64,000 bases of DNA from Thalia democratica (Eukaryota), in NCBI GenBank assembly GCA_965202585.1, contig OZ241830.1:38874001-38938000 (forward strand). The letters run 5' to 3'. The translations under genes were made by a program, and so were the position numbers. Position 1 is the first letter of the stretch. Each line of letters opens with the position of its first letter. Shown here one piece after another: positions 1,578-55,200 of the stretch. The notes under the pieces are model-generated. The model worked only from the letters and a program-made list of their open reading frames with translations, ran no database searches and had not been told where the DNA came from.

Positions 1578-1830
1578 AATACACAATTCATTTAATAAAG
1601 TACATTGTCAAAGCTAAATATGAAGCATAGCTTAACTTGCTTAATCCTTACAACCGATAAGAGTACAAAGCACTCATTATCAAAAATTAATGTTAAACAA
1701 AAATTCTCACATTAGTAACCAAAACCCTACATGAAAATTATCTGTAGGATTTAATGTATTTCCGTTGATTGTTATTTTTCCTTTATATATGATACTAAAC
1801 AGCTAGACTTCATTGTTAAGAAAAGTCATT
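1578..1830 (+). repeat. Duplicated block X (also at 52950-53230)
   Basis: TACACAATTCAT, TTGCTTAATCC, ACAAAGC, TCACATTAGTA..AAAACCCTACATGAAA..ATTATCT and TGTATTTCCG occur in the same order and spacing. Confidence 0.85.
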
Positions 1831-3801
1831 TATTTAAAAGTTTTTGTTGAATATTAGTATAATAAGTTAAGCAAAGTTATCTAGACTAATTTAGTTAAAA
1901 ACATGATAAAAACTTATGTAAAAACTTCTTACATCCTACAAAATTCAAGTGTATAAGTGAAATTTTTATTTGTCGAAATAAATAAATAGAATGTAAATTT
2001 AATAAACTACGGTTTGTCATAAAAAGTTCGGCTTAGCGATTTTATTGCTTAAGTTTTTTGAGAAACTAGGTTTGGGAGTAAGTAAGTATTAAACTTTTGA
2101 TTTAAAAGATATTTATAAAATAGGATATATGCGTACACTTCATACTATTTCATAAATCAATCTAAACTTTCTTAACCAAATTTATATTTTTCAATTTTTT
2201 TTATTTAATGCACTAAATGTAAAGGCTTTTAATACATCTTATTAAGCTTGAATCATCATAACTTATGCATTAAGATACTTCTTAAACGTCAGTTTAATTC
2301 TTAACTACTTATCTAAATTTAATTAAAACAGTCATTAAAAAGTTTATGTTTATATCTTATACAATTTACAAAAGTTAAAACGGATGCCATTTATATTAAG
2401 ATTAAGCTTAAAAGTACTGTTTAAACTCAATGAACATTTCTGAATTTTCTATTTTCTATAGTAAAATTTCTTTCAATTAGTTGATACAGGATACAAATTA
2501 ATTCAAAATTACCTTAAATCTTTCCTTCCAGCACAGTATATTTTTCTCTATTGGATTTCTTTTTCTTACTCGTAATTAATTATTTTGGAAGTTATACTTC
2601 TAAAATTGTAAAAGAAATTTTATTCAAATAGAATCTTAATTAATTGATGTGATGTTACCTTCTAACTTGTATAAAACTACTTACAGAAAATATTGTCTTA
2701 GTCTAAAAACGTTCAATGGAATTCTTTTGAGCAATTCAAAGAATTTTTTGTTGTGTTTATAGCCAAACATTAAGTATTAAGCAAACATAGCAATGTAATA
2801 TTCATTTCTTGCAAGCAATATTTTTGAAAGATTTTAAATATTAAACACTTTAAAAACTCAAATTCTGGCATAGCATTAAAAGTTTAATTAGGCTAATTTT
2901 AAACTCATTTGTAAATAAATAATTTTTATTTTAGTTAGTAATAAACTAGAGTTTTAAAGATGTTTATTCCTACTTACATAGAATTTGACAGTTTAAATTG
3001 TTTGCTGTAAAATTAAATTGTTGTTTTAAAATTTTAGAGAGAACTACATTTAAAACTCAATCAAACTGTTAAAAAATATTTACCAGAAATATCAAAAAAA
3101 AATCTAAGGTTTTTCTTAGAGAAGCTATTACGGTGAAAATTTATTTTTAATAAAAGGCTAATACTCAACAAAAACTAGTAAAAACTTCAAAACTTTTCTT
3201 TCGAAAATACAACAGAAGTTAAAAATACTGCTGTCAAAAAGTTAGCTATACTGGTTTTAGGAATTCAATTGAAGGGCAAGTTTTTGAATTTCACAAAACA
3301 TTTACTTTATTAGGGACCAAACGTGCGACCAGCCGCTTTTCTCACCGACTTCAACTTGACAAAATTAATAATGTCTGGAAAATAAAAATATAAAGTTCGC
3401 CGACAGACGTGTTAAGAGAAGCGTACGTGCCAAATAAAGTAGCAACATTTTTTTTTCAAGTTTAAAACAATTATATTGTCCAGTTAAAAGGCTTCATATT
3501 TTTTTTTCGGTAGACATTTTTGGGCAGATTGTTATGAAAAATACTTAAAATTCTAAATGACAATACTTATGATATTGTTATTAAGTTCGTTTGCATTTTT
3601 ATTATCTCATTAGACTTATACAATCAATATACTTTATTTTTACTTTTTGTTGAGAAAATTTAGATATTAGTTTTTAATTTACTTTATTTAATAATGTATA
3701 TGCTACTAATTTTATGTATATTGAGGTGTTATGTTATATGTTTTGTGTTTTCGCAAAAAAAGACTTTAAAAATAATACTTTTATACTTGTATTTATTAAA
3801 G

Positions 3802-3908
3802 CACTGATTGAAGTTAAGAGTATAGACGACAATGGAATTGTCACTTTGAGAGGATTGCACGCCAAACTGTATGTATGTGTTGGAGAAAAAGGAAAAGTTA
3901 AAGCTCAA
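3802..3908 (+). CDS. FGF: FGF paralogue A, exon 2 (107 nt; (x)LIEVKSIDDNGIVTLRGLHAKLYVCVGEKGKVKAQ)
   Basis: Bounded by attaaAG| and |GTgaga. Same length and phase as exon 2 of copy C (42645-42751), with 7 differences of which 6 are synonymous. Contains the FGF core motif LRG..LYxC..xG. Confidence 0.93.
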
Positions 3909-6900
3909 GTGAGAACAAAACTTTTTTTTTACAAACAACTGTTGAAAAGTTTTAAAAATACATAACTCTTTTTTTTTTGTCTTCTGTACTTATTTAAACG
4001 TGTATTACTAATAAGTACGTTTTTGAATATCTGATATTTCATTTAAATATAGGATTATTCTTATTGTTTTAATTTTTTTTTACAATTTTTGTAATTTTAC
4101 TGCTAATCTTAGCCTAATTGTAATTAGAAAAATTTAGTTTAGTAGATAACTCTTCAAAAAGCTCATAGAACCTTAACTATTTATCATAAAAATTAAGTAA
4201 AAAACTATACACTTTCAACTATTTTTAAAAGCTGTACTTGAGTAAGTAAACCTGCCTAAATTTTTTTTTGTGAAAAATTTAAAGTTTGTTTGTATAATAC
4301 TCAAAAAAATACTTTTACCAAGAGTAATTAGCTAATTTTACTGTCAGTTTTGACAAATCACTAAAAAAAAGATTCAGACATCAAAACAACAATTAGACAA
4401 ACAAGCAAACATATACGGCAAGGAACATAGTTATTGTTACGGTGTTTGCCTTTTATCTTTCAGGGACTCTGATTAACGTTTTTACAAAAATGGTGAGCTT
4501 TTTATCGAGGTCAAGCAGAGTTTAATAGACAAAATATTCTTGGCCGCCGCATATTCTCGTTTGCCTATGTCCCTTAATTGGTAATGAGTTACGCTTTTCC
4601 TTTTCGTATCAGAAATATTATCTGTAGCAACCTTAAAAACCATCAAAATGAATATAAAATTTGTTTTGTTTTTATGCGATTTGTTTAAACGACCGTCGGT
4701 AAGCTTTGTTGAGGTTTGATTCTTCAATGGTTCTTGCTGGTTCAAAAATTGAATCAAAACAGATCATAAAACGAGTAACAATTAAAAACATGACGTGTAC
4801 ACCATGCGGCTAGTGTGACGTCACAGACAATGTTTTTGCTTGACTTGCAATTAACTTTTTGGCGACAATTTTTTCACAATCAATCACACCCTTCAATGGA
4901 ATATGACTGCGCACTTATTATTGTTGTTATTACCAAAATATGTAGAAGTATTCGCCTCGCTATTTTCTTCTTTTTTGTTTGTGCTGTTTTGTTGCTTTTT
5001 TGAATGTTCAACCTCGGTGTAAATTTGTGTCATAGCTTTATATCTTGATTGACTTTTTAAGTTCCTTAATACGCTTTATTGATTTTCTATTATAAGCAGT
5101 TAAAAATTCAAGAAAAACAATATATCTATTTTATAAGTATTAAATACTTTTGTACTTTAAAAGCTGAGTGGTAAAAAATATTTACAAAAAAAAATTGATA
5201 AAAATCAAGTTACGGTGATTTTAAATAAAATTTGGCGGAACGTTTTATTTTGTATTAAAAGATAGAACTAGAATCGAGCTCAGTAAAATGAGCATGTTTT
5301 TGACATAGCCCATCGCACTGATATGTTTAGCATAGAAATTTCGTTTGTTAAATGGTTTTGTTTAAGCTTTGCCGGTTAGTTAAAAAAAAATCGGTATGTT
5401 AAATTTTGTTAGTATCGTTTCCATCTATTTTAAGCAGTTTCATTTGAGCTAAACTTTAAGTATTTTAGTGTTTGAAGTTTAGTATGATATATTTTAATAA
5501 TGTGAATTTTACTCTGCTCATTTTATTTGATATCATTTAACTTTAGTTTTTAGCTATCTTTCACCACTAATTTTTATTTGTAGTGATTTGAATATCACTT
5601 TGTGATGTTATAAACAAAACACTTTAAATATACAAGAGATTTATTTATGAAAGTTCACTAGTTTATACATTATATTAAAAAGTTGTTAGGTCTATGAGAA
5701 AAAAAAAAGTTAATCAAAACAAAGGAAAACTTATAACCACAATATCACTCTTTCACATTGCTTTCAACAGGCCTACTAAGAAATCATTTTCTTGGCACAG
5801 ACTTAACGTTGTACAAACTACGTTCAAAAATTCACAGGTGCCCTAATAAATATACGACGACTATATGGCTAAACTAAACTTTGATTTTTTAATATTAACA
5901 CGTGTTTAGTAGCGTTTAGTTGTCAATGCTCTCAAAACAACAGTTGGTGTAAGTATGTCTGTAACCCTGTATAATATTTACCATACTCATAAACTATTAT
6001 AACTTACTTGTTTGTTTGTTTAATTATTGAATCTATAACTTAGATAACTATTAGCGCAAAATAAACTTAGTCTATCAAGCTGTTACTACAAATAAGAACT
6101 TATTTATAATTAAATTAGAATTCCCTACGTCATCTTTAAAAAAAATACTCATTATAAAAACTTACTCTAAAATAAATATTGTAAGCTAATTGGTTTTTAT
6201 TGAACTAAATCAGTTGCTCGATACGATACTCAGTTTGTTTAACTACAAAAAATACTTGTTTAGTTATAAAATGATGTCATTGACAGAAGACGAATGAAGA
6301 TCTTCTTAGAAACAAGTCGGCTTTCCATAAAAGGTGTTTGGTGCGTCACGACACTGGTGTTTCAGATCCTGCTTGAGTAATTAATGACGAATAAACACAA
6401 CGGGTTTATGTAAACCGCTAAAACCATTCATGCAGAACTGAAGTTTCCGACATTGCGAATTAAAATTGCCTCTATTTTTTCGTCAAGCCCGCCAGTTAAT
6501 TGTGTTTAATTCAATTACTAGCAGTTTCTATGGCAATATGCGTTCTTGGGGTTTTTTAATTTTGTGAAAGGTTCTGTTGTTAAGTTGATACTGGTGGTCA
6601 CAAAAATACTTCTATGGTCTTGTTTGTTCTTTAACATCGAAACTTGTGAATAAGTCAGCAGCTTGGCCTGTAACAAGCTGTTACATAAAATTCATGTGTT
6701 GAATTTTAAATCAATTTTACCGCTTAAAATTTAATCTAAAAATTATTGCTAAAAGCTATAGGTCAATACAGACCTCAAAATACCAGTAACGTTGTTTTGA
6801 GTTATCTGAAACTGATATGTTTTACTTCTTACAAACGTTTACCCACAGTTTGTAAACTTAAACTGTTTTTTAAAGAAAACTTGTTTACGCTTTACGTGTT

Positions 6901-7016: not shown

Positions 7017-7216
7017 GAGAACTATATCAAGGCAAAGTGCACTTTTCAATCAACAGTGAGAGATAACAAACAAACTACCTACAAAGCACTTGCAAAATGC
7101 GGAAAGCGTAGATGCAGGGGATACTTGAATCTCAACAAACAGGGTCAAGTCAGGAATGTTTCCAAACACAGAAGTTATCTTGATCAACAGACACACTTCC
7201 TTGATAGAATACCGAG
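7017..7216 (+). CDS. FGF: FGF paralogue A, exon 3 (200 nt; ENYIKAKCTFQSTVRDNKQTTYKALAKCGKRRCRGYLNLNKQGQVRNVSKHRSYLDQQTHFLDRIP)
   Basis: Acceptor taacAG| in phase 0 joins exon 2 in frame. C-x-F and T-H-F-L FGF core motifs present. Colinear with 46233-46432 without indels. Similarity to copy C stops just after AG|GTTTGAA. Confidence 0.92.
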
Positions 7217-7398
7217 GTTTGAATTATCTCTGAAACATTATCATTTGTTGTTAAGACATAACCATAAAGTGAACGTTATTAAATTAAAAATCAGCTATTC
7301 GAATGTTTACATTAAAAAAATATAGTTTATCAAAAACTTATACTAAAACTAAAAACATTGCTAGCAGACAATAATTTCTTTAAAATGTTTAACTAAAG

Positions 7399-7540
7399 AA
7401 AACGCAGAAGAAGACGGCGGAGAAAGAGACGACACATTCGCTCGCAAAGGCATAACTTCTCACTGGTTGGAGTCTCAACGCAGGACGTTAAATCTGCAAT
7501 CAGAGAACACAGAGCTCTCCTCTTCTCCCTGCAATCCTGA
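7399..7540 (+). CDS. FGF: FGF paralogue A, inferred terminal exon 4 (RKRRRRRRRKRRHIRSQRHNFSLVGVSTQDVKSAIREHRALLFSLQS*)
   Basis: A phase-2 join from CCGAG|gtttga to actaaAG|A is in frame. The same frame and the same TGA occur in copy C. The length difference from C is 24 nt and the only substitution in the shared part is synonymous. Not in the ORF track. Confidence 0.82.
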
Positions 7541-13500: not shown

Positions 13501-14842
13501 ATTTAACAACAAACTACAAAGAAACTCACAAAAAAAAAATAGACATTTTGACTGGCTTAAGTTTTTCATTTATCCGACCAAATAAGTTAAACGCTTTTAA
13601 CGCTTTGTCATAAAATTTTTCAAATAACTTTGAAGAAAATTGTCAGCTGACGATTGTTGCTAGGAGACGAACGTGCCTTGTTGCTAGGCAAATACGCACA
13701 AACCAGCAGGGTGTCAATGTCAGGTCAAAACTGACAGATGCGTAGAATTTTCTCACCTATTTTTACACTTCAAAACTGTTGCATTTTTTAATAAGCTGCT
13801 ACATTTTTGTTGGAAGTATTTTGTCTAAGTTTTTGGTTGTTTATAATAAATACATTTTTTTTTAGTAAAATTTTCTTAAAAACTTATAGATTAGGTACAA
13901 CGTAATAGCTTTGTGATACACGTATTTACGTCGTAAAATAAAGAGAAAGTCCTTCAATTAAAATGTTGAAAGTTTAAAAACTGTCATTAAGAAAACAAGA
14001 CTATACTATTGAATTTATGTCACAGCGGTTTAATATAATTTTTTTTCTTTTTAACTTTTACCCAATCAAGTTGAACTTCAATTAATTCATTTGACTTTAA
14101 ATCAATGTTGAATACGAAAAGCAGCCATTGATCTTTCAATTAACAAAATAACTGCTTTCTTCTGAATCGATAAAACTTTTTTTTTATTGTCAAATAAAAC
14201 CATTCATTCAAGTAAACTAAATTCTTTTAGAGTATTTATTTTTCTATGTATATAAAGATAAAAATTTCCTTTAAAAATAAAAAAACTTTGAGCATAGTGC
14301 AATATTTCTTTTTTTTTTCTTGTGGACATGATTAAATATTTCATCGCAATATTAAAATACTTGCAATAACAAATATTATACGTATTTATCAGCTTATAAA
14401 AAACAAAAACTACAAAGAAAAACAGGTTACACCATAATAAACTAATAAGTAGCAAAAACCTGTTTAAACTTCTCAACAAGTTTAGATACAAAACAACAAG
14501 CTCTTAAACTTTTACAAATATCCTCGATTTCGTAAAACTAATATTAGTGAAAGATTTACAACAAAACAGAAAAAAGAGCTTAGATGGTCATTGAGACATT
14601 TTTTTGGTTAATGTAAATAACAATACGACTATAATGGTTGGTACACGACTAAAAGAGAACAAGCAGTTTATTTTCTCTCAAAACCCCATCTAAAAATGTC
14701 GCTTCGTTATCAACTATAAAAGAAACTGATGCACGTCAAGTGCTGATCTGTTACACCGAAATCTATTAGTGCAAAAGTATTTAACAACCTTGCTGGCTCA
14801 AGTGCCATTTTGTTGAGTGAGTTAGCCCCACACGCGTTATGA

Positions 14843-15125
14843 AGTCATAGCACGAAATTGCGTTATCTTAGGAAGGTTGTTTAGCTGCTGTCGAAAACAA
14901 AAGACGAATAAAACCTTTCGGCCTCAATCAAATATTAGACAAACTTAATTGTCTTGATTGAGTGTTAAACTTTTAGATAACGGCTGCTGGCGAGAACCAA
15001 ATTCCCATGCGTGAAATGTTTGCATTTTAAGAAATGGATAAGGATTCTTTTCATTGCAACTCAGACAAAAGACACCTTCACATGAGCGTTTTTCTTTGAT
15101 TGATTGCTGTTATCTCAATTAACAA
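14843..15125 (+). repeat. Duplicated non-coding blocks T+V, copy 1
   Basis: TTTAGATAA..TTCCCATGCG..ATGTTT..TTTGATTGATT..TGTTATCTCAATTA is shared with 22498-22770. Partial matches at 51040-51125 and 35856-35925. Confidence 0.85.
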
Positions 15126-15441
15126 GTGTTAAAGTTTGAACAAGTTACTTTCCGTGGTCTATGATTTATATCATCTATTCGAAAACTTGTAAAATCAGGG
15201 CAAGAGCATAAATGTGTAAATACAAACATTTAAGTTGACCCTTGGTTTTAACTTGTAATTTTCATTATGTCTAGCAGCTGTTACAACTAACATTCTTTGA
15301 AACGTGGAAAGAATTTTCTACTCACTTATTTAGATGTAAGCTGGTGCACGAAAGTTTTAGGTTCGTAACAGCACAAAAATATTAAATACAGTAGCATTTA
15401 AATTTGTAAGATGGGTAATTTAAAACTTTACAGATGCAGTT

Positions 15442-15753
15442 GTCACGTAAATCTAGTTGCCATGGAAATACGTTGTTGCACGCAACCGGTAAATGTCATT
15501 TCTTAGCAACAAGAGTTGCATAATAATCAGAAGGCTTTTGATTTCTGGGCACGGCCCTTGCTCATGTGATTAGCGACAAACTGAATGTCGAACATGTGAA
15601 GGTTTTACAAACCCCTCATTGAAAACTTTTCGGTAAGCACGCGATACGGTTTGAAAAAAAAAAACTGCCATAGAATTTTATCAAAAATAGTATTTTTTTA
15701 TAAGTTAAACTAAACAAAATCCTGCAGTAATTTTCTATTATTTCCTATAAGCT
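15442..15753 (+). repeat. Duplicated non-coding block W2, copy 1
   Basis: About 14 differences over the first ~215 nt versus 51972-52279. More diverged copy at 23699-23900. Confidence 0.95.
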
Positions 15754-15756
15754 TTT

Positions 15757-15810
15757 CATGTGAAGGTTTTGCAAACCCCTCATTAAAAACTTTTTCGTAA
15801 TCACGCAATG
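15757..15810 (+). repeat. Local ~53-bp direct duplication of 15593-15646
   Basis: CATGTGAAGGTTTT.CAAACCCCTCATT.AAAACTTTT.CG.TAA.CACGC.AT appears twice, 164 nt apart. Confidence 0.9.
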
Positions 15811-39419: not shown

Positions 39420-39748
39420 TGAAAACTTACGCAAAGCGCCGGTGGCAGGTGAAATTTTGAGAGAAGTGAAAAACGCCCGAGGCGAGAGAGCAGGGATGAA
39501 AAAACTGACGGGTGAAATAGGAAGCTACAAATTTGATTAACAGCCAAATATTCGACATTTCCATGTCAAACGCATGTGATGCTGTTGTTTATACAACAGT
39601 TAATTATTTTTTTATTCTTTAATTAGTTATTTGCTTCACGTAGTTTTAATATAAGATTACTTATTTTTTCTGCAGTTTTTGCTTTACACTGTCAAATAAC
39701 TTTACTAGAGACGAAGATTTTTATTTAAAGTTTGAAAAAATAAACACA
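39420..39748 (+). promoter_or_regulatory. Putative proximal promoter/5' UTR of FGF copy C, with a splice acceptor at 39674-39675
   Basis: Locally GC/CpG-richer stretch 39420-39600 and a strong ttttttctgcAG acceptor about 70 nt before the ATG. The TSS cannot be determined. Confidence 0.4.
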
Positions 39749-40436
39749 ATGACATCAGTCCACTCCAAAGCAAGCTGCCTGTCAACAATGGTGCAGCAAC
39801 AAAGTATAAAACTTCTGACGTGTGCCAATCAATGGTGTCAAAAATGTGCCAACAATGTTAAACACTCCTCTAATGACTCCACGAGCAAAAAGTCTCATAA
39901 ACCAGTTCTTCATTCTAAAAGTCACTTTTTTCGACTCGCAGCTTTTTTGCTCTTCCTTTTCATAGCTCTGTTGTGCTGTGCACCGACTGCTAGTGCGAGG
40001 ACTCCCACCGCTCTCCGCTCCCTGGCAACTGCCAACTCTACCGTGGCAACCGATGTTCATCGAAACCGCTCGTTGCCAACTAGAACCAAGTCTGGGTTAC
40101 GAGCTTCGCCGAAGGAGCGACCCCAAAAAATATTAAGAAAAAGGAGAAAGAAAAATTACCCAAGAAAAAATCAAAAAAGTAGGTCAGTAAAACCCAAGAA
40201 GGCCAACAGGACAAAAAAGGGAAGGGGCAGGAAAAGGAAGAAAAACAAGCGCAAGAACCGTAAGAACAGAAAGAAAAGTAATAAAAGCACTCCGAAAGAG
40301 TCATCAGTTTGGGGAGACGCGTATGTGGATACTAAAATCAGCAGAATTTACAGCAGATCGGGAAATTCTTTTCATCTAGCAGTGCTGCAGAACGGAACAG
40401 TAAAAGGGGAAAAGAGTGACGAAAAATCTGATTACA
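39749..40436 (+). CDS. FGF: FGF paralogue C, exon 1 (N-terminal extension, hydrophobic signal-like segment at aa ~60-83, Lys/Arg-rich region, start of FGF core RIYSRSGNSFHLAVLQNGTVKG)
   Basis: ORF 39749-40441. Donor TAC A|GTTAGT in phase 1 joins exon 2 in frame. RIYSRSG..HLAV..NG.V.G matches FGF beta1-beta3. Confidence 0.92.
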
Positions 40437-42644
40437 GTTAGTTGCATGCATATTTAATTATATTGTTTGTGATTATAACGATTTAAAGTATAAGTTAGGC
40501 TTACATAGACTTTTTATACTAAAGAGTATTTAAGAAGCTTAATTTAACATTACACTGCCAATATAATTTTAAATAGTCCACTTGGCTTATATATTACGAC
40601 TTAATCACACTTCATACTGTTACCTTATTAAAGTTTACAAAATTTTAAAGATATAGTATTTAGAATTTGTAATGAAAAACGTTTAATAGTTATAACTACG
40701 CTTATCGTGTTTCATTTAATGAGATGATAAGTTTGTAAAAGCTTTTATTTAATTTTTGAGAAAAAGTAATAGTTGTGTATACTCGTAAAGTGAATATCAT
40801 TGTTATTTTTAAGTAGCATAATAACTAACTTTTTTGAATACATCTGTAACTTGTACATATATGAGACAATATGTATAAAAATATACAAATTATTTATTTT
40901 TTTAATCATATATTAGTCTAAAACTCAGCAAAATTATATACAATAAATATTCTACTGTTTTAAAAAGCGTATAAACAACGTAATACAATTAAAAAAAACC
41001 TTACGTCTAAGAAAGTCTAAACTGTTGTAGTTTATTTTTAGAGTTGTATTTTATTTTGGAAAACAAATATTGACGCAGCAATAAAGAAAGCAAAGCAAGC
41101 TATTTATACACATTATTTTAGGTTAAATCTTAAACAAAGAAAAGGAAACACCGTTTGTATCATTAAGTACACAATCAAAATGAAACTAGCAGTTTACTTT
41201 CTCACCAAACCACACCAAAAAAGTTGCCTTTTTATAAAAATGATACTGAAACCTACACCAGTCTTATCACTAAGCACCGCTATCTATCAAAGCGAAAACG
41301 AATCAAATTGACATGTCGCTTGTGTGCACAAGCGTCACTTTTGTGAACGATTAACCCTCCATCCCCTTACGGAATGACGACACGTTTCGAGTGTAAATTA
41401 TCTGTCTGCGCGTGTGTTATGCTGAAACAATCAACAAACATTCGATATTGACAAAATCTTAATTGTTCAGGTGAACTTTTGACAATATCGCGCAGGAATA
41501 AGTTAGAACAGTGTTACCTTTTTGACCTACCAAAAAAAACTGTATTTTCAAGGATTAATTACACTATCGTACTAAAGGTAAACATACCAACATTTTTCAC
41601 TTAGTTTACTTCGTTTTTCAATGTTTAAAATTTAGTAATTGATAAAGCCTGAGTTGTGAAATGAAACTATTTTTTTCCACTCATCTAATCTATTTTCCCA
41701 CAAAAATGCAGATGTTGTTAGGCGTCGTTTTGAATGTCAATTTTTATAGACAAAACAAATCCAAATGCAATATGCGTCAGCTAAATTAGGTCATAAAATA
41801 TCTAGCGTTTACTATTTGACTGTTTGTAGGCTTTGAGAATTGTGTTTTCTGCGTTGTTATAAACGTATTTTTAAAAACAAAACAAAGCTTTTTTTCATAT
41901 AACCTAAATGAATCAATCTAAATCATACAACAATAGTTGAAACTAACAGCTAATAAAAAGTTTTGTGGTTTTTTTCAAAATAAAAATTAAAGTTTCAAAC
42001 GAATTGATTAAATAAATAAAAAAATACTTTGTTCTGTGAAAGACTACGGAGCGCAATGTGGTAATTTATTAAGTTAGAATGCTATTATCACTAAAATTTA
42101 AAGTAAGTACAAACTTTTGTGCTTGGTTTTGTAAAAAAAAGCGTCTTTGAAACTACTTATAGTACTTTATCACATAAAAGCCTGTCGTTTAACTTTGTGT
42201 CAATCAAGTTTCACAATGTTGCTTAAGCAATAAAATTTATGAAATTCTAAAGATATGAAAGTAAGGTTTTGTGTTTATAGAAAAGCATTAAAAGATTTGT
42301 AAACACAAACGAAATAAAGTTGTCTTGTAGGACATGCAGTTTTACAGAGATTAATAGCTAACAGTTTTTAATTTAAAATAAAGTTTATAGTTTACAAGTG
42401 TATAGCCATTAAAATGAAAAAAAAACTATATAAAAAATTATATTTTAAAGTTTATCAATTCATTATTAGAAGATATTTAAGTTTTAGTTTTAAGTATAAT
42501 CAAAAAATTTTTATGTTTAAAAATGTAATTTTTTAATGCTGCTATCATACCTTTATGAAAATCTATATGTTAAAAAAATTTTGCGACTTCCATTTTTAAG
42601 TTTTTACATTTTTATAGAACTTTAAAAAAAACATACTGTTTTAG

Positions 42645-42751
42645 CACTGATTGAAGTTAAGAGTATAGACGACAATGGAATTGTCACTTTACGAGGATGG
42701 CACGCCAAGTTGTATGTATGTGTGGGAGAAAAAGGAAAAGTTAAAGCTCAG
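42645..42751 (+). CDS. FGF: FGF paralogue C, exon 2 (107 nt; (T)LIEVKSIDDNGIVTLRGWHAKLYVCVGEKGKVKAQ)
   Basis: Bounded by ttttAG| and CAG|GTAAAA. Phase 1/0 is the canonical FGF core intron pattern. The 107-nt length and YxC..CxF cysteines recall the FGF8/17/18 group (from recalled knowledge; needs a phylogeny). Confidence 0.95.
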
Positions 42752-45700
42752 GTAAAAATAAAACATTTTTCTGTCATATTTGAACTAAAAAAAATATATA
42801 TATATAATGTAAAACAAAAATAAAGTTTAAGTATGTTGGGTTTTATCTGTTCTTATATAAATGGTTTTAACTTTAAACGTTAACATAAAAGTGTTTAAAG
42901 TCAACCTTATTTTGTTTAGTATTAGAACAACTACTTACACTTTTTTCTTAAAACTCACAAATTCCAGCAACCACTTACGTCACGTGTAAATTTGATTACG
43001 CGCAACGCACGTATGTCACGTCACAAGGGGCCAAGTTCAAATCTGCTTGATATTTTTCTGTACCTCTCAATGAAATTATTTCTAAAAGTAAACACATTTG
43101 AAACTCTTTAATTAAACACGCTTTTTGATTTATAATATATCACGGCTCCTTTAATATTGTTAAAAAACAACTAATACACAATCAATATACCGTCGCAGCT
43201 TTTTATTGGTAAGAAGTGTTAAAAAACATAGTATATTGTATGTTGTGTGTATAATAAAAAAAACGTTTTACCAGCTATTTGTTTATTCTACAACTTAACT
43301 TCAATAACAATAAGTCTTTACGTTAGTTAGATGAAATCATATTTTGATCTTTTTCGATGCGTTTGGGAGAACAGCTTTTACAAATCATGTAGTTATTTCT
43401 GATTAATCCTTTTGAATAAAATTCGTTTAATATATAGGTAATCTTGTTGTTATACAAATTATTAACTGACTTATCAAATATGATATGTTTAAATGGAAAA
43501 TAAACATTGACTAGGAATTTTTATTCGCTGTTTACCTTATAATCGTCAACAAGAGTTAAGATTTTTTCCAGTTTTTTTTAGAGATTTATATTCTCTATAC
43601 AAATCTGCAATTGCACATAAAACCTATAGAGAAGTTATTAAATAGTATTAAAAATAATTTTATTTAATTTAGCTTGAAGTTCATGTAAGTTACTCTGCTG
43701 GCAAAATTTGCAATCAACTTTAAAAACTTCCTATTACATAATACATATTTTTTTGGCTTTGAAAGTCATATGATGTTTGAAATTTTTAAGTATATTTCAA
43801 AACCTTAACATAAACTTATGTTTGTAGTATACAAAAAAGTAAATTGTTGCCAAAAAAAATTATAAATAAATTAAAATACATTTTTTGTTGTAAAAATAAA
43901 AAGGAATATTTTTTGCTAGTTTTTTTCAAACTCAAGTTATTATAAAAACAGTTTATCCTTATTATTTAAAACAAAAACAATTTTTAAGCACACGAGAAAA
44001 CGTAATAATTTTATTCATGACGTCACGACAGCCTGACAAGTCATTAAACTCGAAAAGTCAACAACTGGCTCAAATTCTTCAAACTGCGTTTTTCCAACTC
44101 CGATGGGCCCTAACAGCGGCCCCTCAGGGAGACTCGCAACTGTTGCCATAAGAACGGGACGCATTTTCTCAAGGTCAAGCGAGTTTAGGAGCTTAAATGT
44201 GTTTGACAGCCCACTTTCTCTTATTCGGTAAATAAACGTCCGTCCCTTGTTAAATTTTTCACTTTCTTTTTGTCGTTGGCTAGAGGGGAAATTATCAAGA
44301 AAATGTTTACTCGTGTTTGTGATGCTCGTTTGTTTACACTTGCAGAAAAAACCATGTGTTTATTTGACAGGCCATCAAAAGATAAAACGAAATTGGGCAG
44401 TATAAAATCGATAATGTTATGGCAAATAACAACATGCGGTCACTATTTTTTCTTTCACTTGCATTTAACTTTCTACCAATTGTTAGATTATGTCTTTTAT
44501 CTTATACTTCTAAAGCTGTTTTTGAATAACTTTTTACAATTTTTTTCTAATCCTTATTCGGCTTAACTGATTTTAATTTTCTGAGTTAAATAACATCCGT
44601 CACTGTTGTGGCAACTTCTGTTGTTTTGTTGTTTGTATACGACAAAAAGCAGACAAAACGTCATCATATTCTGCTTAAAAAATAAACAAAGGTCAGAATA
44701 GTGAAAAGCTTATATCGACAAACCGCAATAAATTTACCTCTGTCAAACTTTTAATTCACAAAAACAGAAATTAAAAAAAACTTTTTAGCACTGAAAAAAT
44801 GTCATTAAGCTGAAGTGTGTTTATTTTAATCGTGTTAGCACAAAACAAGGTCAAGAGTGTTTTGATTAAATTTATAAAGGTTTTTACATTTGGGCACCTA
44901 TCAATTAAGTTTTAATATAAAAATAAAGAAAAAATAGGAATTTGACACAGCAAAAAAATATTTTTAAAGTATTTAATCAAAGTGTTACTAAACTATAAAA
45001 AAAAGTAAAGCTGTTTTTTTAAGTTCTAAGAACAAAAACTAACTCGAATAATAAAGTTGTTCAGAAATATTTATTTTTGAGTTAACCTTTGAATTGTAAA
45101 AAGAATCATTAAATAAATTATTTAAAAAGTAAAATAAAAACCAAATACAAAACAAAAACTGTTGTGGAAATTTTATAAACTGATACAAAACTTTTTACTA
45201 CAGCCAAATTAAGCACATATTAATTTTATGAGCTGTTTTAAAGCGCCTTTTGGGAAAATATACCGTGTGAATATAGCTATAAAGAGAAGCCAAATTACAT
45301 TAGTACGTTTTACTTTTATTTACAGGCAATCCATAAGCTGAAGTAAAGTTCACATAATTTGTATTTGAAATAACTAACTGTCTATAAAAATTAAAACGTT
45401 AAGACAAAGGATTTTAAATGATAAACTAGTCTTTAAGTTTGTACTAAAACTTTTAAATTTAGCTGTCTAGTTAAAAGAACTTGCAATTCATAACTAGTTA
45501 CATACCTAACATAGATAATAGTCATTACATTTAAATATCGAAAGATACTTTTAATTAAGAGCTACCAGTGTAATAGAAAAATAAATAAATATAATTTAAC
45601 TTTTATACTTATATACTGTACTTTATAATTTTATTTCTATTTTAGAAATAGCCTTTTAAGAACATAATTTTTGCTTAAAATATAACTAATTTTGGTACAA

Positions 45701-46232: not shown

Positions 46233-46432
46233 GAGAAATATATCAAGGCAAAGTGCACTTTTCAATCAACAGTAAGAGAAAATTCACAAACTACCTACAA
46301 AGCACTAGCAAAATGCGGTAAGCGAAGATGCAGGGGATATTTAAACCTGAACAGACAGGGTCAAGTCAGGAATGTGACGAGGCACAGAAGTTATCTCGAC
46401 CATTTGACTCATTTTCTCGATAGAACACCCAG
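46233..46432 (+). CDS. FGF: FGF paralogue C, exon 3 (EKYIKAKCTFQSTVRENSQTTYKALAKCGKRRCRGYLNLNRQGQVRNVTRHRSYLDHLTHFLDRTP); reads on to TAA at 46448 if intron 3 is not spliced
   Basis: Acceptor gtacAG| in frame with exon 2. FGF core C-terminal motifs present. Donor CCCAG|GTTTGA is at the same position as in copy A. Confidence 0.94.
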
Positions 46433-46602
46433 GTTTGAACTGTTCTAACACTCTTTCATTGTGATATAATATTTTTTTTAATTTTTCTGTTAACTGTTTT
46501 TTTCATGATTATAATAAGTTAGCTATCAATTTAATCCTAAATTAAAAATATTAAGGGTTAAACTTTAGTAACAAATATATCTAACTTAAACAAACTAAAA
46601 AG

Positions 46603-46720
46603 GATACGAAAGAGACGACACACGCAAAGGCATAACTTCTCACTGGTTGGAGTCTCAACGCAGGACGTCAAATCTGCAATCAGAGAACACAGAGCTCTCC
46701 TCTTCTCCCTGCAATCCTGA
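46603..46720 (+). CDS. FGF: FGF paralogue C, inferred terminal exon 4 (RIRKRRHTQRHNFSLVGVSTQDVKSAIREHRALLFSLQS*)
   Basis: The phase-2 join CCCAG|...actaaaaAG|G is in frame, with a ctaac branch-point-like motif upstream. Total CDS is 688+107+200+118 = 1113 nt = 370 aa plus stop. Matches 7399-7540. Confidence 0.82.
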
Positions 46721-49457: not shown

Positions 49458-51039
49458 TCAAAGTTTAAAGGTATTTTAGTTTTTTACTTGTAGAAATACT
49501 GAAAAAGTGTAACAAACATAAGAACAAATACCTGTCTTCAGTATATAATTTGTGCTATCGAAAAGTAACAAAAAGTATTAATTAAATAAAATGATTACTA
49601 TTTATACAAACAAAATAAGCTGATTAATTTATACAATAGTTTAAAAAAGAACTTTAGAAAAAAGTAGGAGATTAAAACTAATCAAAATACTAAAACAAAA
49701 GTTTTGAGATTATAACACTAAGTTATATTACTAATAAACAAGTACATTATACACAATGTTTTCGCTATATTTTATTTATATTTCTATTTAACTAATGATA
49801 CTTATAAAATTCAAATAAATTTATAACAAATTCTAACGAGCTGAATCATAATATTGTTTTCTCTGTATAGTATTTAAGTAACTTCTAATTTTTTGATTAA
49901 CACTAACTTTAAATAAGTTGGCTTATAAGATACTTTAAATAAGTAAAAACATCATTAAAGTAATGTCTAAGAAACTATTTTTGTGTATTTGTACCTAAAG
50001 TATTTTTCTCTTTCGGTTTACTTCAAAACAATGATTGATTTTAAATTTAAAAAAAAATATTTTAGTTTAAATCCTAACTTTATTATGATTACCAAAGTTC
50101 TAAAACGCTACATTCACTTTACCAGACAATTACGCGAATTTAAACCACACAACTTTCTTTATTTCTTCTTACTCGCACATTTTAAATCCGTTGATTAAAT
50201 TTAGGTCAATTTTTGTCATCTATCTTTTGTATATCTATTCAAAAAAATATAATTTTTTTAAAGTTGAACATCTCGAATTAGTTTGTTTTGTTGTTGGATA
50301 TTAGTTAGCATAAAACAAAAAAGATTAAGAGATTCATTAAAACTTAATTTAAGTACTAATGTGACCTTTTTTTTTTTTTGATTGATATACATTTTTTTTA
50401 TGATTAAACATTTTTTAAGTAAGTAAATGTACCACAAAAAAGGTTGTTCTAATTAATATTTACAAACAAACGGTTGATGAATAGGTGAGTTAACAATCGC
50501 TCATTTAAAAGTTATATATATTTTAGTTATATTTTAGACGTACATTTTATTTTTACTTAACGTTTACACAAACCAAACACTTTGTATAAAACTCACTTCT
50601 TATAAAAAGGTTCTTTTTCCGACCCCAGCATTACGCCAAAAAGTTTTTTGAGTTTTTTAAACTGCTGTTTAGTTTGTTTTGTTACATCAAAAATGATGGC
50701 AACATTTTAAAATAAAAAGAACTCAAAAGGTTCGTTGAAACTTATTTCTACTTGTAATTTTTGTAACAAAATATGATTAAAATGGCTTTAACCTTAGGAA
50801 ACATATAAGTCATTTAACAGTTTATTTTCTCACTTAATCACATCAAAATATCGTTTTTTCACCAACTGAACAGATATTGACACTCTTTATCAGTAAGCTC
50901 CTCCAACCAAAATAATATTTTAGTGTAAATTGCTTTTTTTAGTTTTTCAAACACGAGCCTGTTATGTAACAGTTCAAAAGTAAACCGTACCTTGGGTAAC
51001 AAAAGAAGCGCAAACTTTTTTCAAATAATCAATTAATGG

Positions 51040-51125
51040 ACCTGTTTAGTTTACTTAAGTGTCAGTTTTTTGATAAGAGAAAACAGACCGAGATTCTGGT
51101 TCTCATGCGAAGAGTGTTTGAAGAG
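51040..51125 (+). repeat. Duplicated non-coding block V, copy 3 (partial)
   Basis: GGACC..AGTGTCA.TTTTT.GATAA..TTCTCATGCG..GTGTTTG aligns with 22574-22660. Confidence 0.7.
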
Positions 51126-51971
51126 AAATAAGTCGAAGTTTGTTTAATTAGCTCGATGGCATCCCTGAACAAAAGCTTCCTATCAATTGCCATTTTTAAA
51201 TATTTTCCATAAGTTTTGTTTTCCATAAGTTTTCATCTTTAGTTGGTTGTTTTATTTTAACTTTGCAAACCTGTCAAACTTTAAAAAAAAAAATTTAAAT
51301 CAGCGTTTACAACTTCTTACAACTACTATATATACAGAAACGAAAATAATTAATTGAAAATTTATAAACTTTTTTAGATCTAGGTTTAACCAATATCAAT
51401 TTTTTAAAGCAATTGGCAGTAAAAAAGGGTCAAAAATAATCTCAACTTTTGCCTGCTTAAATTAGTTAACAAACACAATTCGTATACAACTACAGCTCAA
51501 CCTAAATGATAAAAACTTCTAGTACTAACTATTGGTTAAATATATTCCTGCTAAGTTAAGAAAATATATTTTTTTGGAAAAATATAGTAATTGAATTTCA
51601 TTAACTTGTTCAAATTGTGCAACAACGTTAAAAATTACAACCTATAACCTCGATAAACACAGTTTTATGACGTAACAATCGACCTGCTGCGTTTATCGGC
51701 TGCTGACTATGAAAGGCACCTGTTCGCGACTTAAAATATTTTCATCATTCGATCATCAGTTTAATTATAATTTTATAGGAGCGCCGCTTTTCCCAGATTT
51801 TCGGCTATGATCGTAACAAAGTTTTTTTACAAGTTTTGCATGCAAAAGTGTGTATTTAGCCAGCTATTTAGTAGTAATCCAGCGCAGATTTTCGTAAAAT
51901 CTCAAGGCTAAATACAGAAGCACTTGAACTTAAGGAAAGGGCGTTTTTAAACTCAACGCACAGAAATAGCC

Positions 51972-52279
51972 GTCACGTAAATCAAGTTGCCATGGAAATA
52001 CGTTGTTGCACGCAACCGATAAATGTCATTTCTTAGCAACAAGAGTTGCATAATAATCAGAAAGCTTTTGATTTCTGGGCACGGCCCTGCTCACGTGATT
52101 AGCAACAAACTGAGTGTCGAACATGTGAAGATTTTACAAACCCTTTATTAAAAACTTTTCGGTAAACACGCGATAAGATTTGAAAAAAAAACTGCTGTAG
52201 AGTTTTATCAAAAATAGTACTTTTTAATCAGTTAAACTAAAAAAATCCTGCAGTAGTTTTGTATTAATTCTTATAAGCT
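51972..52279 (+). repeat. Duplicated non-coding block W2, copy 3
   Basis: Near-identical to 15442-15753. Confidence 0.95.
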
Positions 52280-55200
52280 ATATACAATTGGTCACTGCAA
52301 AAGAACGCTTAACAGAGTTAATCTCTACGCGAGTTTTTTAAGTTTAATACAATGTAAAAGTTGCTTTATTCGTTTATAACATAGCTGTAAAAGTTTTCCT
52401 TCAAAAGTTTTTACTTCATTTTTGTTAGAAAATTATTTTGAATTTAAATCGTGTAGGCTATAAACAAAAGTACTACAAAAGTAGTAATAACTTTTTGATT
52501 AAACTATATTTAAGTGTTAGGTTTATAGAAATTAGATATCTTAAGGCTGTTTTTAAAACTTTAAAATATAAAATACTTAATATAATAAAAAATCGACTTC
52601 ATGTTTTGAAATATGTAAAGCATTCTGCTTTAAAATGAGATTTATAGATAAATCTTAATTTGTAAATTATTGAATCAAAAAAGGTAGAAACAAACATTTT
52701 TAGTGATATTACAAAACTGATTTTTATCTTTAAACTGTTTATTTAATTATTAGTTTTTTAGTTTTTTTTTACTTAAAATTGTGAAAACTAAAAAATCTAT
52801 TACAAACTTACAAGTTCTACCAGACCTTATTGTTTAAAAACATTTCTACATGTAAGTAAGCATTAACATTCTACTTATATACCCAGATTGTCTTTAAGTT
52901 AGTTCAACGAAGATAAAGTAACAACAGTTAAAAATTTAGATAGTAACAATTACACAATTCATAGTGGGTTGCGTATCAATTAATTTTTAAACTTATCTTT
53001 TGATTTACAGTTAGTTTTGCTTAATCCAAAATTATATTTGAACTGATATAAGAACAAAGCTTTCACTGTCATAAAGCCATTCATAAACAGAAAAGTTTCA
53101 CATTAGTATAAAAACCCTACATGAAATAATTATCTAGGTGGGCTTATTGTATTTCCGCTCGATAACAATCACACTGTTCATTTGCTAAATTAAAACACAC
53201 CACTTGACTTTTAAGTTAGAAAATAAGTTTTTCTCAATTTTTACCGAAATAACACCATAATACTGTTTAAAGTTAAAATATAGTAATCGTAGTAGAAATT
53301 GTTGATCATAGAACTTGATAGTAAAAAATTTCGTTTTCCACAATTATGTATTAAATTGCGGTATTTGAATGTAAGTTTTATAGAAACAAAACAATATGCA
53401 AATATTCAATACGATTTACGTAAGTAAGTTAAATAAAATTTTGCTTTGAGCTTTATCTCTCTAAAAATGTTTTTAAAATTCATTTTTGTACTTTGTGTAG
53501 CTGGAACGTATACAAAATTGATCAAAAATTGCTCTATGACTTATTTAAAAAATTATCTAATGTTTTTAATTTACAAAATGTGTAGTAGCATTGATTATAA
53601 ATGGTCATTTTACTGCATTGTACATACCGAAAAAAAAAATTCGTTTTGCTCTGAGCAACTAAATTCTGTTAAAGTTTTTACAAACCAGAAAGATGAATTA
53701 CTTGCAGTTAAACCGATATTATGTTCGAGAGTTTTAACAAGTATAGTTACTTATTTTTTAAGATTTTAGTTTTAGATTTAATATGACTAAACAAAGTGGA
53801 CAGTAGTTTTATACTTGAATAACTGGCTCGCAGGCCTTAGTTTGCTGACACTTTGATTAACGAGTATGAGCTTATTTAGTTGCTTCTAAGAATTTAATTT
53901 CTTCAAAAAATCAAATCTACGTTTGCTAAATAAAATATCATCAAGACATATATACCTTCTGTTTTACATAAAACTATTAAAAACTCGAAATTAAGCACAA
54001 TATTGTTCTTAAGCATTTCATAAGTAAATTAGATGTCGCGGATAGCATCTACTACAGTGTGCAGTGTAGTTTTCAAGTTAACTATCGCTGTTTAAACTTT
54101 ATTTAAACCTAATCTAAGATTAAGGCAACTTAATACGATATTTATTTCCTAAAAAATTGTTTTAAATTTAGGTACGCACAGACAAGTTTAAAAAAATTAC
54201 CTTTGGAATTTCAACATTCATAAGAATTTTTTACTCGTGCTTATAGCCAATCATCAAGCGTAAAAGACAACACAATAGTTTGTTTGATTTATACACCATA
54301 ACTTTCTAGAAAGGTGTTATACAGTAAATATTTTTGAAGTTTAGGTTTAAATTCAGTCTCGATGTGTTGTATTTAATTTGAAATTATTGTTAGTAAATTT
54401 AATAAAGTTAAATACCTAAGTTTATATAAAGGCTTTTCATATTAGCTTGGGTTAAGGTTGATACTTAAAAGGAGTTATGTTTAAATAAAATTTGGTACTT
54501 CCTAAAAAGGTTTCCAAATTGTGTTTAAAGGTCACAAAAAAGTTTTGATTGAGTAATTTATTTTTAATACTTGACGCCCGGACCCTTTGGAAAAAATGCT
54601 CAATATCTCTCAAAACTTATGTGAGATAAAAACTTCAACCTCTGAGTTTTTAGATTAAAACTGTTTTACATGTAGTAATTATCGCTCAAACACTCTGTGT
54701 AAAGTTTAAGACGGCCTGGAAAACGTTCTATGAAGTATTTTTTAGATTTTCTGTCATTTTTTATCGATTTTTGTAAATTACAGTAATTTTTTTAAACATC
54801 AAGAAAATTTTTAATAAGAGATATTCGTTTATCAAAGCTTCTCAGACATTTTTATACTCGTACCAACAAACAGTTATCAACTAATTTCGCCGTCACATTT
54901 GACAAATTACAAAGCAACATTCAAAATAGCAATTATGTCAATTAGCAAACAAGTATCACCACTAAGTTTTGCCAGCTAATACATCAAACTTAGTTATTAT
55001 GTAAGAACATACAGCCAGCCAGGTATTTGGATAAGCCAATTACTGGCACGTTGCTCGTAGTATACCTCATTTTGAAAGTTTCAGTTTCCATATTTGGGTG
55101 ATTAATTATTAGCTTAATTCTTACTATCTTTTTGAAGTTATAATTTGAAACAGCCCTTATATGGTGAAATAATTAAATTGCTAATACTAGTTCAATAAAA

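What the first reader, a model, noticed from the sequence alone, without database searches (positions are those of the whole stretch)
1578..53230. Four-unit tandem FGF array in which regulatory-looking blocks outlived the exons
Seen, in order: X, ex2, Z, Z2, ex3, ex4, T, V, W2 | Z2, T, V, W1, W2 | Y, Z, pseudo-ex3, T | ex1, Y, ex2, Z, Z2, ex3, ex4, V, W1, W2, X. The 16-24 kb unit has no recognisable exon and the 28-36 kb unit has only a broken exon 3, yet both keep alignable 70-300 nt non-coding islands amid unalignable DNA. Inference: these are cis-regulatory modules kept under selection after coding loss, forming an array of duplicated (shadow-like) enhancers between two live FGF cassettes.
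Basis: partly seen in the sequence, partly recalled or inferred. Interest (0 to 1): 0.8.

Follow-up and report, generated by a model that had tools for sequence, protein, structure and literature searches.

The report
Decaying tandem FGF array with conserved islands
A marine animal's genome carries a row of duplicated growth-factor (FGF) gene copies, two intact and the rest reduced to fragments that still share a few short low-copy non-coding islands; these are plausible gene switches, but whether they still work after their gene died is not shown.

Summary
The observation largely holds. The window (25% GC, marine planktonic animal) has two intact FGF cassettes: A (exons 2-4, 3.8-7.5 kb) and D (exons 1-4, 39.7-46.7 kb). 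It also has one frameshifted exon-3 relic (30.3 kb) and same-strand, colinear non-coding blocks.

Corrections:
- X and Y are one block lying upstream of exon 2.
- V-V'-W at 22.5-24 kb joins X/Y at 27.7 kb once a polymorphic 2.7-kb transposon is removed.
- X/Y after D's W starts a fifth unit.
- T in units B and C was not found.

The blocks are not dispersed repeats. Read depth is 1-5x single copy, against 1,000-10,000x for the neighbouring transposon. W is non-coding, has no RNA-family or fold signal, is 40-43% GC, and is conserved in motif-sized runs. A relative's contigs differ from the orphan blocks half as often as from the spacers (p=0.004).

However, the relic exon's own changes are all at third codon positions, so that unit died recently. 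Exon 4 is near-identical between A and D, which points to gene conversion. Most blocks (58-67% identity) sit near the neutral level.

Selection after coding loss is therefore possible but unproven. This scan noted the same pattern at other loci of this genome (s1-287081, s1-311158).

The parts
1483..2079 (+). X/Y block upstream of cassette A exon 2 (in intron 1 or the 5' region). No exon 1 lies in window positions 1-3800.
   Evidence: matches 27695-28316 and 52915-53454 above the null; no exon 1 found.
3802..3908 (+). FGF cassette A, exon 2 (107 nt, AG acceptor, GT donor)
   Evidence: Pfam FGF profile 33-71; 93% identical to the D copy; dN 0.012, dS 0.32.
4441..4973 (+). Z (4441-4579) and Z2 (4683-4973), intron-2 blocks of A. 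Z carries GAGGTCA and Z2 carries a perfect CRE, TGACGTCA, at 4816.
7017..7216 (+). FGF cassette A, exon 3
   Evidence: Pfam FGF profile 70-124; dN 0.07, dS 0.75 against D.
7398..7540 (+). FGF cassette A, exon 4: basic run followed by a conserved C-terminal tail and the stop codon
   Evidence: in frame with exon 3; differences from L001 are mostly synonymous; 1 difference in 98 nt against D.
14550..15142 (+). T (14550-14854) and V (14929-15142), weakly conserved blocks
   Evidence: T core AGCAGTTTAYTTTCTC is shared with 41065-41384 and 50714-50904; V matches 22565-22789 and 51033-51186.
15362..15872 (+). W block, copy 1 (core 15442-15650), plus a partial local duplicate at 15757-15872
   Evidence: 85-92% identical to 51891-52279; no codon periodicity.
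18263..18536 (+). Orphan Z2 copy in the exon-less unit B. The CRE palindrome has decayed here.
22565..23937 (+). Orphan V (22565-22789), V' (23255-23690) and W (23682-23937)
   Evidence: W is 75% identical to the other two copies, with clustered invariant runs; low copy in read data.
24477..27199 (.). High-copy hAT-like non-autonomous transposon insertion. It has an 8-bp target duplication (CTATACTG) and CAGGG.../CAGTGG... terminal inverted repeats. It is not part of the array, and the empty site is present in contigs of all three DNA runs.
27695..28460 (+). Orphan X/Y block of unit C
29547..29740 (+). Orphan Z block of unit C. It keeps the CRE TGACGTCA (29547) and GAGGTCA (29663).
30332..30471 (+). 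Pseudo-exon 3 of unit C. It has 7-nt and 1-nt deletions, and its 3' third and exon 4 are missing.
   Evidence: 92% identical to A; differences by codon position are 2/2/11.
39650..40425 (+). FGF cassette D, exon 1 (start of the open frame to the GTTAGT donor): signal-peptide-like segment, K/R-rich linker and the first FGF strands. This is the only exon 1 in the window.
   Evidence: marine metatranscriptome runs hold 0.24 and 0.11 of its sampled words.
41065..41882 (+). T-like block (41065-41384) and Y (41624-41882) inside intron 1 of D
42645..42751 (+). FGF cassette D, exon 2
44018..44244 (+). Z block of D, with the CRE (44018) and TCAAGGTCA (44169)
46233..46720 (+). FGF cassette D, exon 3 (46233-46432) and exon 4 (about 46598-46720)
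50714..52279 (+). T (50714-50904), V (51033-51186), V' (51536-51960) and W (51891-52279) downstream of D
52865..53641 (+). X/Y block after D's W: the head of a fifth unit. Weak colinear matches follow at 54185-54334 and 54866-54953. No exon 2 follows.

Best explanation
This is a tandem FGF gene array evolving by birth and death.

Shown:
- Unequal crossing-over-type duplications produced at least five same-strand unit starts. The cyclic order is X/Y, exon 2, Z, Z2, exon 3, exon 4, T, V, V', W.
- Two copies (A and D) are kept under purifying selection.
- The other units were broken by frameshifts and deletions and swollen by transposon insertions.
- The shared non-coding islands are ancestral, low-copy pieces of the duplicated unit.
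- One dead unit (C) was still evolving as a coding gene until recently.

Inferred:
- W is most likely a cis-regulatory element of the FGF unit that predates the duplications. The CRE/AGGTCA-bearing core of Z and the core of Y may be too.
- The presence of these blocks in dead units is explained mainly by recent gene death and patchy loss of DNA, with some help from short-tract gene conversion.
- Continued use of the orphan copies by the surviving genes is possible, and only weakly indicated.
For: Gene copies:
- FGF exons and gene models.
- A against D: dN/dS about 0.04-0.09 with dS 0.32-0.75. Introns and flanks are only 54-56% identical, which is saturated.
- Colinear + strand matches exceed the reversed-sequence null.
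- Pseudo-exon 3: differences from A fall 2/2/11 by codon position, and all C-specific changes are at third positions.

W block:
- No codon periodicity, no Rfam or tRNA hit, fold z-scores from -1.4 to +0.3.
- A-D core identity 92-93%, against 54-56% in introns.
- Eight invariant runs of 8-14 nt in all three copies. Runs of 9 nt or more number 7-8, more than in shuffles (p 0.0002-0.004).

Copy number:
- Summed word depth is 77-490 over the orphan blocks and their non-transposon spacers, against 54-99 for a single contig and 1e5-9e5 over the adjacent transposon.
- Removing the polymorphic insertion at 24477-27199 leaves W and X about 1 kb apart, comparable to 0.6 kb in the D-tail copy.

Related organism:
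- Divergence is lower in the blocks than in the spacers.
Against: - There are no chromatin, reporter or transcript data for any block.
- Similarity between the W copies could come from gene conversion rather than constraint. The exon 4 core differs at 1 of 98 nt where exon 3 differs at 30 of 199.
- X, V, V' and T (58-65% identity) are barely above what neutral DNA of this age would show.
- Cassette A's exon 1 is not in the window, so A's status as a complete gene is inferred, and so is the assignment of T-V-W to the 3' side of one unit rather than the 5' side or intron 1 of the next.
- The lower divergence of the blocks from organism B could reflect composition. The spacers are AT-rich, indel-prone and harder to align.
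Confidence: 0.55

Rival explanations
1. The orphan blocks in the dead units are kept by ongoing purifying selection, because they act as redundant (shadow-like) enhancers on the promoters of the surviving FGF genes A and/or D.
For: - The orphan blocks are low copy.
- Organism B contigs differ at 1.6% in the orphan blocks against 3.3% in the spacers, p=0.004.
- Orphan W keeps eight invariant motif-sized runs.
- Unit C keeps a perfect CRE and an AGGTCA site in Z.
- The dead units lie 10-25 kb from D's exon 1.
Against: - Unit C's coding loss is recent, so retention needs no selection.
- Orphan Z2 lost its CRE.
- Half of orphan W is only 63.5% identical to the A-tail copy at 15.4 kb (68% to the D-tail copy at 52 kb), although that half is 93% identical between those two copies.
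- The divergence contrast is confounded by composition, and it spans only about 1-3% divergence.
- There is no functional evidence.
Confidence: 0.22
2. Conversion islands. The islands are neutral DNA kept similar by repeated short-tract ectopic gene conversion between units. It is seeded where identity is still high enough, and selection on the non-coding blocks plays no part.
For: - The exon 4 core differs at 1 of 98 nt between A and D, including synonymous sites, while exon 3 has dS 0.75.
- In pseudo-exon 3, the first 61 nt of the 134-nt region compared with A and D carry 5 of 5 informative sites shared with A; the rest is mixed.
- The islands are 70-400 nt long, the size of conversion tracts, and richer in GC than their surroundings.
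- A follow-up elsewhere in this genome reached this reading for another array (s1-287081; a lead only).
Against: - Conversion does not lower divergence between orthologous copies in a relative, yet that divergence is lower in the blocks.
- Conservation in W is clustered at a 9-14 nt scale, finer than conversion tracts.
- W identity falls off gradually rather than at a sharp edge.
- The mosaic in pseudo-exon 3 is not significant (5:0 against 3:5; Fisher test, not run with the tools, about 0.08).
- Most blocks are only 58-67% identical, too low to seed conversion.
Confidence: 0.15
3. W is not an enhancer. It is a transcribed element: an alternative promoter or first exon for cassettes that lack exon 1, or an exon of an unannotated non-coding RNA.
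For: - W lies 0.6-1 kb upstream of X/Y and exon 2 in two units, and no exon 1 lies between them.
- A TATAAG motif is conserved about 100 nt downstream of the core in the A-tail and D-tail copies.
- Cassette A has no exon 1 within the 3.8 kb upstream of exon 2.
Against: - There is no conserved ORF, and no donor site shared by all three copies.
- There is no Rfam hit or fold signal.
- The metatranscriptome contigs did not cover orphan W. This is weak evidence, from one environmental run.
- The first strands of the FGF fold are encoded only by D's exon 1.
Confidence: 0.06
4. The blocks are fragments of a dispersed repeat or transposon family.
For: The window does contain high-copy elements (24477-27199; a Penelope-like GIY-YIG ORF at 48858-49457).
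Against: - Depth over the blocks is 1-5x single copy, against 1e3-1e4x for the transposon.
- All copies are on one strand and in the same order.
- Each invariant W motif occurs only in the three W copies within the 64 kb.
Confidence: 0.02

Closest known systems
Birth-and-death evolution of tandem gene arrays (established model for globin, olfactory-receptor and MHC clusters)
   Same: Same-strand tandem copies of different ages, with intact genes interspersed with pseudogenes and fragments. Independent transposon insertions and traces of gene conversion are present.
   Different: Here the fragments that remain recognisable are mostly non-coding blocks rather than exons. The family is a developmental signalling ligand (FGF).
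Shadow or redundant enhancers, and duplicated enhancers after tandem gene duplication (for example the Drosophila FGF pair pyramus/thisbe; the duplication-degeneration-complementation model)
   Same: Several related non-coding modules lie within about 50 kb around paralogous FGF genes, and the copies could in principle drive overlapping expression.
   Different: No activity, chromatin or expression data exist here. Redundancy is inferred only from sequence similarity, and several copies sit in dead units.
Conserved non-coding elements retained after loss of the neighbouring paralogue (genomic regulatory blocks and bystander genes, described in vertebrates after whole-genome duplication)
   Same: Non-coding islands outlast the coding sequence they were duplicated with.
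   Different: In the known cases, retention is shown by deep cross-species conservation. Here only a relative 1-3% diverged was available, and the gene death looks recent.
Canonical three-exon FGF genes (Pfam PF00167)
   Same: The beta-trefoil domain is split at the usual positions. Exon 2 is 107 nt (104 nt in vertebrates, from memory), entered in phase 1 and left in phase 0. Exon 1 carries a signal-peptide-like segment.
   Different: There is an extra fourth coding exon that adds a basic run and a conserved 28-residue tail. Exon 1 has a long K/R-rich linker.

Membership tests
FGF family (PF00167) | Sequence match to the FGF beta-trefoil domain across its whole length | tested here: met
   Each exon was scanned separately. 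In D, exon 1 matches profile 2-30 (18.8 bits), exon 2 matches 29-76 (23.5 bits) and exon 3 matches 67-124 (22.6 bits). Each piece is below the 24-bit cut-off, but together they cover the profile and sum to about 65 bits. FGF is the best-scoring family for every piece. The spliced protein was not scanned as one sequence.
FGF family (PF00167) | Complete gene with exon 1 (applies to cassette A) | tested here: inconclusive
   No exon 1 lies in window positions 1-3800. It may lie upstream of the window.
Cis-regulatory module (enhancer) | Non-coding, and not a known or structured RNA | tested here: met
   W has no codon periodicity, no Rfam or tRNA hit and fold z-scores from -1.4 to +0.3.
Cis-regulatory module (enhancer) | Conserved above the local neutral level, in motif-sized patches | tested here: met
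   This holds for W. The A-D core is 92-93% identical against 54-56% in introns, and invariant runs are clustered. For X, V, V' and T (58-65%) the result is inconclusive.
Cis-regulatory module (enhancer) | Open chromatin, enhancer marks or reporter activity | not testable with these tools
   No chromatin or reporter data are available, and no RNA run of this animal was listed.
Shadow-enhancer array kept by selection after gene loss | Orphan copies evolve more slowly than neutral DNA after the coding loss | tested here: inconclusive
   Organism B contigs differ at 29/1815 in the blocks against 32/963 in the spacers, p=0.004. This is confounded by composition. Unit C's death is recent and orphan Z2 lost its CRE.
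Dispersed repeat / transposable element | Many copies in unrelated genomic contexts | tested here: not met
   Summed word depth over the blocks is 1-5x single copy, against 1e3-1e4x for the adjacent hAT-like element. The W motifs occur only in the W copies within the window.
Gene-conversion islands | Paralogue identity above the synonymous-site level, with a mosaic of relationships along the sequence | tested here: inconclusive
   Met for the exon 4 core (1 of 98 nt). Suggestive but not significant for pseudo-exon 3. For W it cannot be separated from selection within one genome.

The most novel reading that the evidence does not exclude
The dead FGF units between cassettes A and D survive as a scaffold of working duplicated enhancers. 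W, the CRE/AGGTCA-bearing Z and Y would be kept by selection because they add to or buffer the expression of the two surviving FGF genes. Together with similar loci noted elsewhere in this genome, that would make 'pseudogene arrays turned into enhancer arrays' a recurrent way of building regulatory landscapes in this lineage.
Probability: 0.2. Interest if true: 0.6.

Novelty: new member of a known kind. Interest (0 to 1): 0.35.

Why it matters
If the orphan blocks are active, this locus would be a compact natural example of enhancers outliving the genes they were duplicated with and being taken over by neighbouring paralogues. It has about 50 kb, three W copies and two live genes, so it could be tested copy by copy. 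If they are not active, the locus still has a use. It shows how recent gene death, transposon insertion and short-tract conversion can produce an 'islands amid unalignable DNA' pattern that looks regulatory. This pattern recurs in this genome and should not be read as selection without data from other species.

Tried and rejected
- Rfam at gathering thresholds and ARAGORN on the whole window found nothing.
- A consensus fold of the three W copies and single folds on both strands showed no covariation or stability signal.
- Two JGI metagenome scans, one with a W core pattern and one with an exon 4 pattern, gave 0 hits.
- A word-index protein search with a W ORF found no candidates. An exhaustive HMMER search with another W ORF gave one weak hit in an unrelated 1224-aa protein, E 1.6e-5, treated as chance. 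So W could not be followed into other assemblies.
- A protein-atlas search with exon 3 gave only chance-level neighbours.
- A global MAFFT alignment of unit A against unit D recovered only the exons, because spacing differs between the units.
- Looking in the window for other copies of the 2.7-kb transposon gave only AT-rich matches at noise level.
- A weak resemblance of Z to the exon 1 peptide (E=4.3) was judged to be chance.
- The organism could not be named. The runs are coded, and the closest proteins come from unnamed ENA marine contigs. Another agent's 'pelagic tunicate' note was not tested.


Full report
**Window and organism**

The window is 64 kb with 25% GC and no gaps. Its sequence is held by two coded runs of one organism, by a run of a second, closely related organism, and in part by marine metagenomes and metatranscriptomes. 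The only protein-database hit to exon 3 is an ORF on a Tara Oceans contig. It is therefore a marine planktonic animal. Another agent's note calls it 'probably a pelagic tunicate'; I did not test that.

**Gene content**

Pfam finds FGF (PF00167) in four ORF pieces:
- exon 2 at 3802-3908 (A) and 42645-42751 (D);
- exon 3 at 7017-7216 (A) and 46233-46432 (D).

A motif search found a single exon 1, in the open frame 39650-40438. It has a signal-peptide-like segment, a K/R-rich linker and the sequence RIYSRSGNSFHLAVLQNGTVKG. Its tail matches FGF profile positions 2-30. tblastn finds no second exon 1 anywhere in the window.

A fourth exon is real coding sequence. It lies at about 7398-7540 in A and 46598-46720 in D, continues the exon 3 frame, and encodes a basic run plus the tail NFSLVGVSxQDVKSAIRExRALLFSLQS. 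Its differences from the related copy on contig L001 are mostly synonymous.

Between A and D, dN is 0.012 and dS 0.32 in exon 2, and dN is 0.07 and dS 0.75 in exon 3. Introns and flanks are only 54-56% identical even when forced into alignment, which means they are saturated. The coding sequence of both cassettes has therefore been under purifying selection. Cassette A has no exon 1 within the 3.8 kb upstream that the window holds.

**The repeat structure**

I used the reversed sequence as a null; its best hit scores 66.8 bits. The following self-matches exceed it, all on the + strand and colinear:
- X: 1483-2079 / 27695-28460 / 52865-53641;
- Y: 28075-28347 / 41624-41882;
- exon 2 with its flank;
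- exons 3-4 with their flanks;
- pseudo-exon 3: 30310-30471;

V and Z2 score exactly at the null maximum. Z and T score below it. All four are colinear and contain identical runs of about 9-16 nt. T in units B and C was not found.

- **X and Y are one block.** They overlap in unit C, and the block lies upstream of exon 2.
- **The tail of B and the head of C form one segment.** Contigs of all three DNA runs join 24476 to 27200 with 8 shared letters. The intervening 2.7 kb has summed read depth of 1e5-9e5, an 8-bp target duplication (CTATACTG) and CAGGG... terminal inverted repeats. It is a polymorphic hAT-like insertion. Without it, W at 23.9 kb lies about 1 kb from X at 27.7 kb, comparable to the 0.6 kb in the D-tail copy. 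So 'tail of B' plus 'head of C' form one continuous segment: V-V'-W-X/Y-Z-pseudo-exon 3.
- **There are at least five unit starts.** The X/Y copy after D's W is the head of a fifth unit.

A T-like block also lies inside D's intron 1 (41065-41384). T-V-W may therefore be 5' or intron-1 elements of the following unit rather than 3' elements of the preceding one. The window cannot decide this, because A's exon 1 is missing from it.

**Are the blocks dispersed repeats?**

No. I laid contigs of organism A (two runs), organism B and a metatranscriptome on 22500-28499 at 80% likeness or more. Summed depth over the orphan V/V'/W and X/Y blocks and their non-transposon spacers was 77-490, against 54-99 for a single contig. 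That is 1-5x single copy. The W core is at about 2.5x, as expected if the two other W copies are partly laid on it. The transposon next door reaches 1e5-9e5. Within the window, each invariant W motif occurs only in the three W copies.

**What is W?**

- It is non-coding. Substitutions fall 16/16/13 (A-D) and 19/15/19 (A-B) across the three frame positions.
- It has no Rfam or tRNA match.
- It shows no convincing covariation and no fold stability, with z-scores from -1.4 to +0.3.
- It is 40-43% GC in a 25% GC setting.
- The A-tail and D-tail copies are 92-93% identical in the core. That is as conserved as exon 2 and far above the introns.
- The orphan copy at 23.7 kb is 75% identical to both. 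It keeps eight invariant runs of 8-14 nt: GTCACGTAAA, TAGCAACAAGA, TTTGATTTC, GGGCACGGCC, GTGATTAGC, TGTCGAACATGTGA, TTTTACAAACCC and CACGCGAT. Runs of 9 nt or more number 7-8, more than shuffling the mismatches gives (p 0.0002-0.004).

Z likewise carries an AGGTCA half-site in all three copies. A perfect CRE palindrome, TGACGTCA, lies just upstream of Z in C and D and within Z2 in A. The window has four such palindromes where, by my own estimate from base composition, about 0.3 would be expected. These features fit transcription-factor binding modules. That reading is an inference and not a demonstration.

**Are the orphan copies under selection after coding loss?**

Evidence for:
- Organism B's contigs differ from the window at 11/949 positions over V'/W, against 35/1189 in the neighbouring spacers (p=0.004).
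- Over all orphan blocks the figures are 29/1815 against 32/963 (p=0.004).

Caveats on that evidence: the spacers are AT-rich and indel-prone, the total divergence is only 1-3%, organisms A and B share variants, and I could not see where within the V'/W contig the 11 differences fall.

Evidence against or neutral:
- Pseudo-exon 3 differs from A at 2/2/11 sites by codon position.
- All of C's private changes are at third positions. Unit C therefore evolved as a live gene for most of its history and died recently, through frameshifts and deletions of exon 2, the end of exon 3 and exon 4. Its X/Y and Z blocks need no selection to still be recognisable.
- In orphan W, one half is 63.5% identical to the A-tail copy and 68% to the D-tail copy, although that half is 93% identical between those two copies.
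- The orphan Z2 copy has lost the CRE.
- X, V, V' and T are 58-65% identical. That is close to what neutral DNA at dS 0.3-0.75 would retain wherever indels have spared it.

**Gene conversion as a rival**

- The exon 4 core differs at 1 of 98 nt between A and D, synonymous sites included, next to an exon 3 that differs at 30 of 199 nt. Against L001 the same exon shows ordinary synonymous divergence. This is best read as a recent conversion tract.
- In the 134-nt pseudo-exon 3 region compared with A and D, the first 61 nt carry 5 of 5 informative sites shared with A, and the rest is mixed. This is suggestive but not significant.
- Conversion therefore operates in this array and may have raised the W(A)-W(D) identity.
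- Conversion does not explain the lower divergence of the blocks from organism B, nor the 9-14-nt grain of conservation in W.
- A follow-up on another array of this genome (s1-287081) concluded 'conversion islands'. I treated that as a lead. Here the evidence is mixed.

**Verdict**

The blocks are low-copy ancestral parts of a tandem FGF unit, and W is a good candidate for a cis-regulatory module. The claim that the orphan copies are maintained by selection as a shadow-enhancer array is neither refuted nor shown. Recent gene death together with patchy decay and conversion explains most of the pattern.

I rate this as a new member of a known kind (birth-and-death tandem array with duplicated conserved non-coding elements), of moderate interest.

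Noticed in passing
window 24477-27199: A 2.7-kb hAT-like non-autonomous transposon with an 8-bp target duplication (CTATACTG) and CAGGGACGTCGCGTGG / CAGTGGCGTCGCGTGG termini. The family is very high copy (summed depth 1e5-9e5). Contigs of both organism A runs and of organism B also carry the empty site, so the insertion is polymorphic or haplotype-specific.
   Followed up: partly
window 7443-7540 and 46623-46720: The exon 4 core is nearly frozen between paralogues: 1 difference in 98 nt, synonymous sites included, while the neighbouring exon 3 has dS 0.75. The same exon diverges normally against contig L001.
   Followed up: partly
window 48858-49457 (- strand): A 200-aa open frame with a GIY-YIG-type motif. 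It has dozens of relatives (up to 91% identity) on unnamed ENA marine contigs, some carrying PF01541 or PF26215. It is probably a Penelope-like retroelement fragment between D's exon 4 and T.
   Followed up: partly
L001 (Tara Oceans contig, 1696 nt), 303-526 and 740-868: A third FGF copy, either a paralogue or an ortholog in a relative. Its exon 3 is 74-76% and its exon 4 77-80% identical to A and D at DNA level (88% protein identity to A in exon 3). Its intron and flanks do not align with either. It confirms the four-exon gene model.
   Followed up: partly
window 4816, 23391, 29547, 44018: Four perfect CRE palindromes (TGACGTCA), where about 0.3 would be expected from base composition (my own estimate). 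Three sit in or next to the intron-2 blocks Z/Z2 of units A, C and D, and one sits in orphan V'. The orphan Z2 copy at 18.3 kb has lost its CRE.
   Followed up: partly
window 15593-15645 and 15757-15872: The 3' part of W is locally duplicated in the copy at 15.4 kb. The first 53 nt of the duplicate are 89% identical to the original.
   Followed up: no
window 39740-40430: Two marine metatranscriptome runs hold 24% and 11% of the sampled words of D's exon 1. This hints that the gene is expressed in the sea, though DNA carry-over in those libraries is not excluded.
   Followed up: no
window 54185-54334 and 54866-54953: Weak colinear matches to A's intron 1 (2700-2851) and intron 2 (4317-4405). 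They suggest that the fifth unit continues with exon 2 deleted, but both score at noise level.
   Followed up: no
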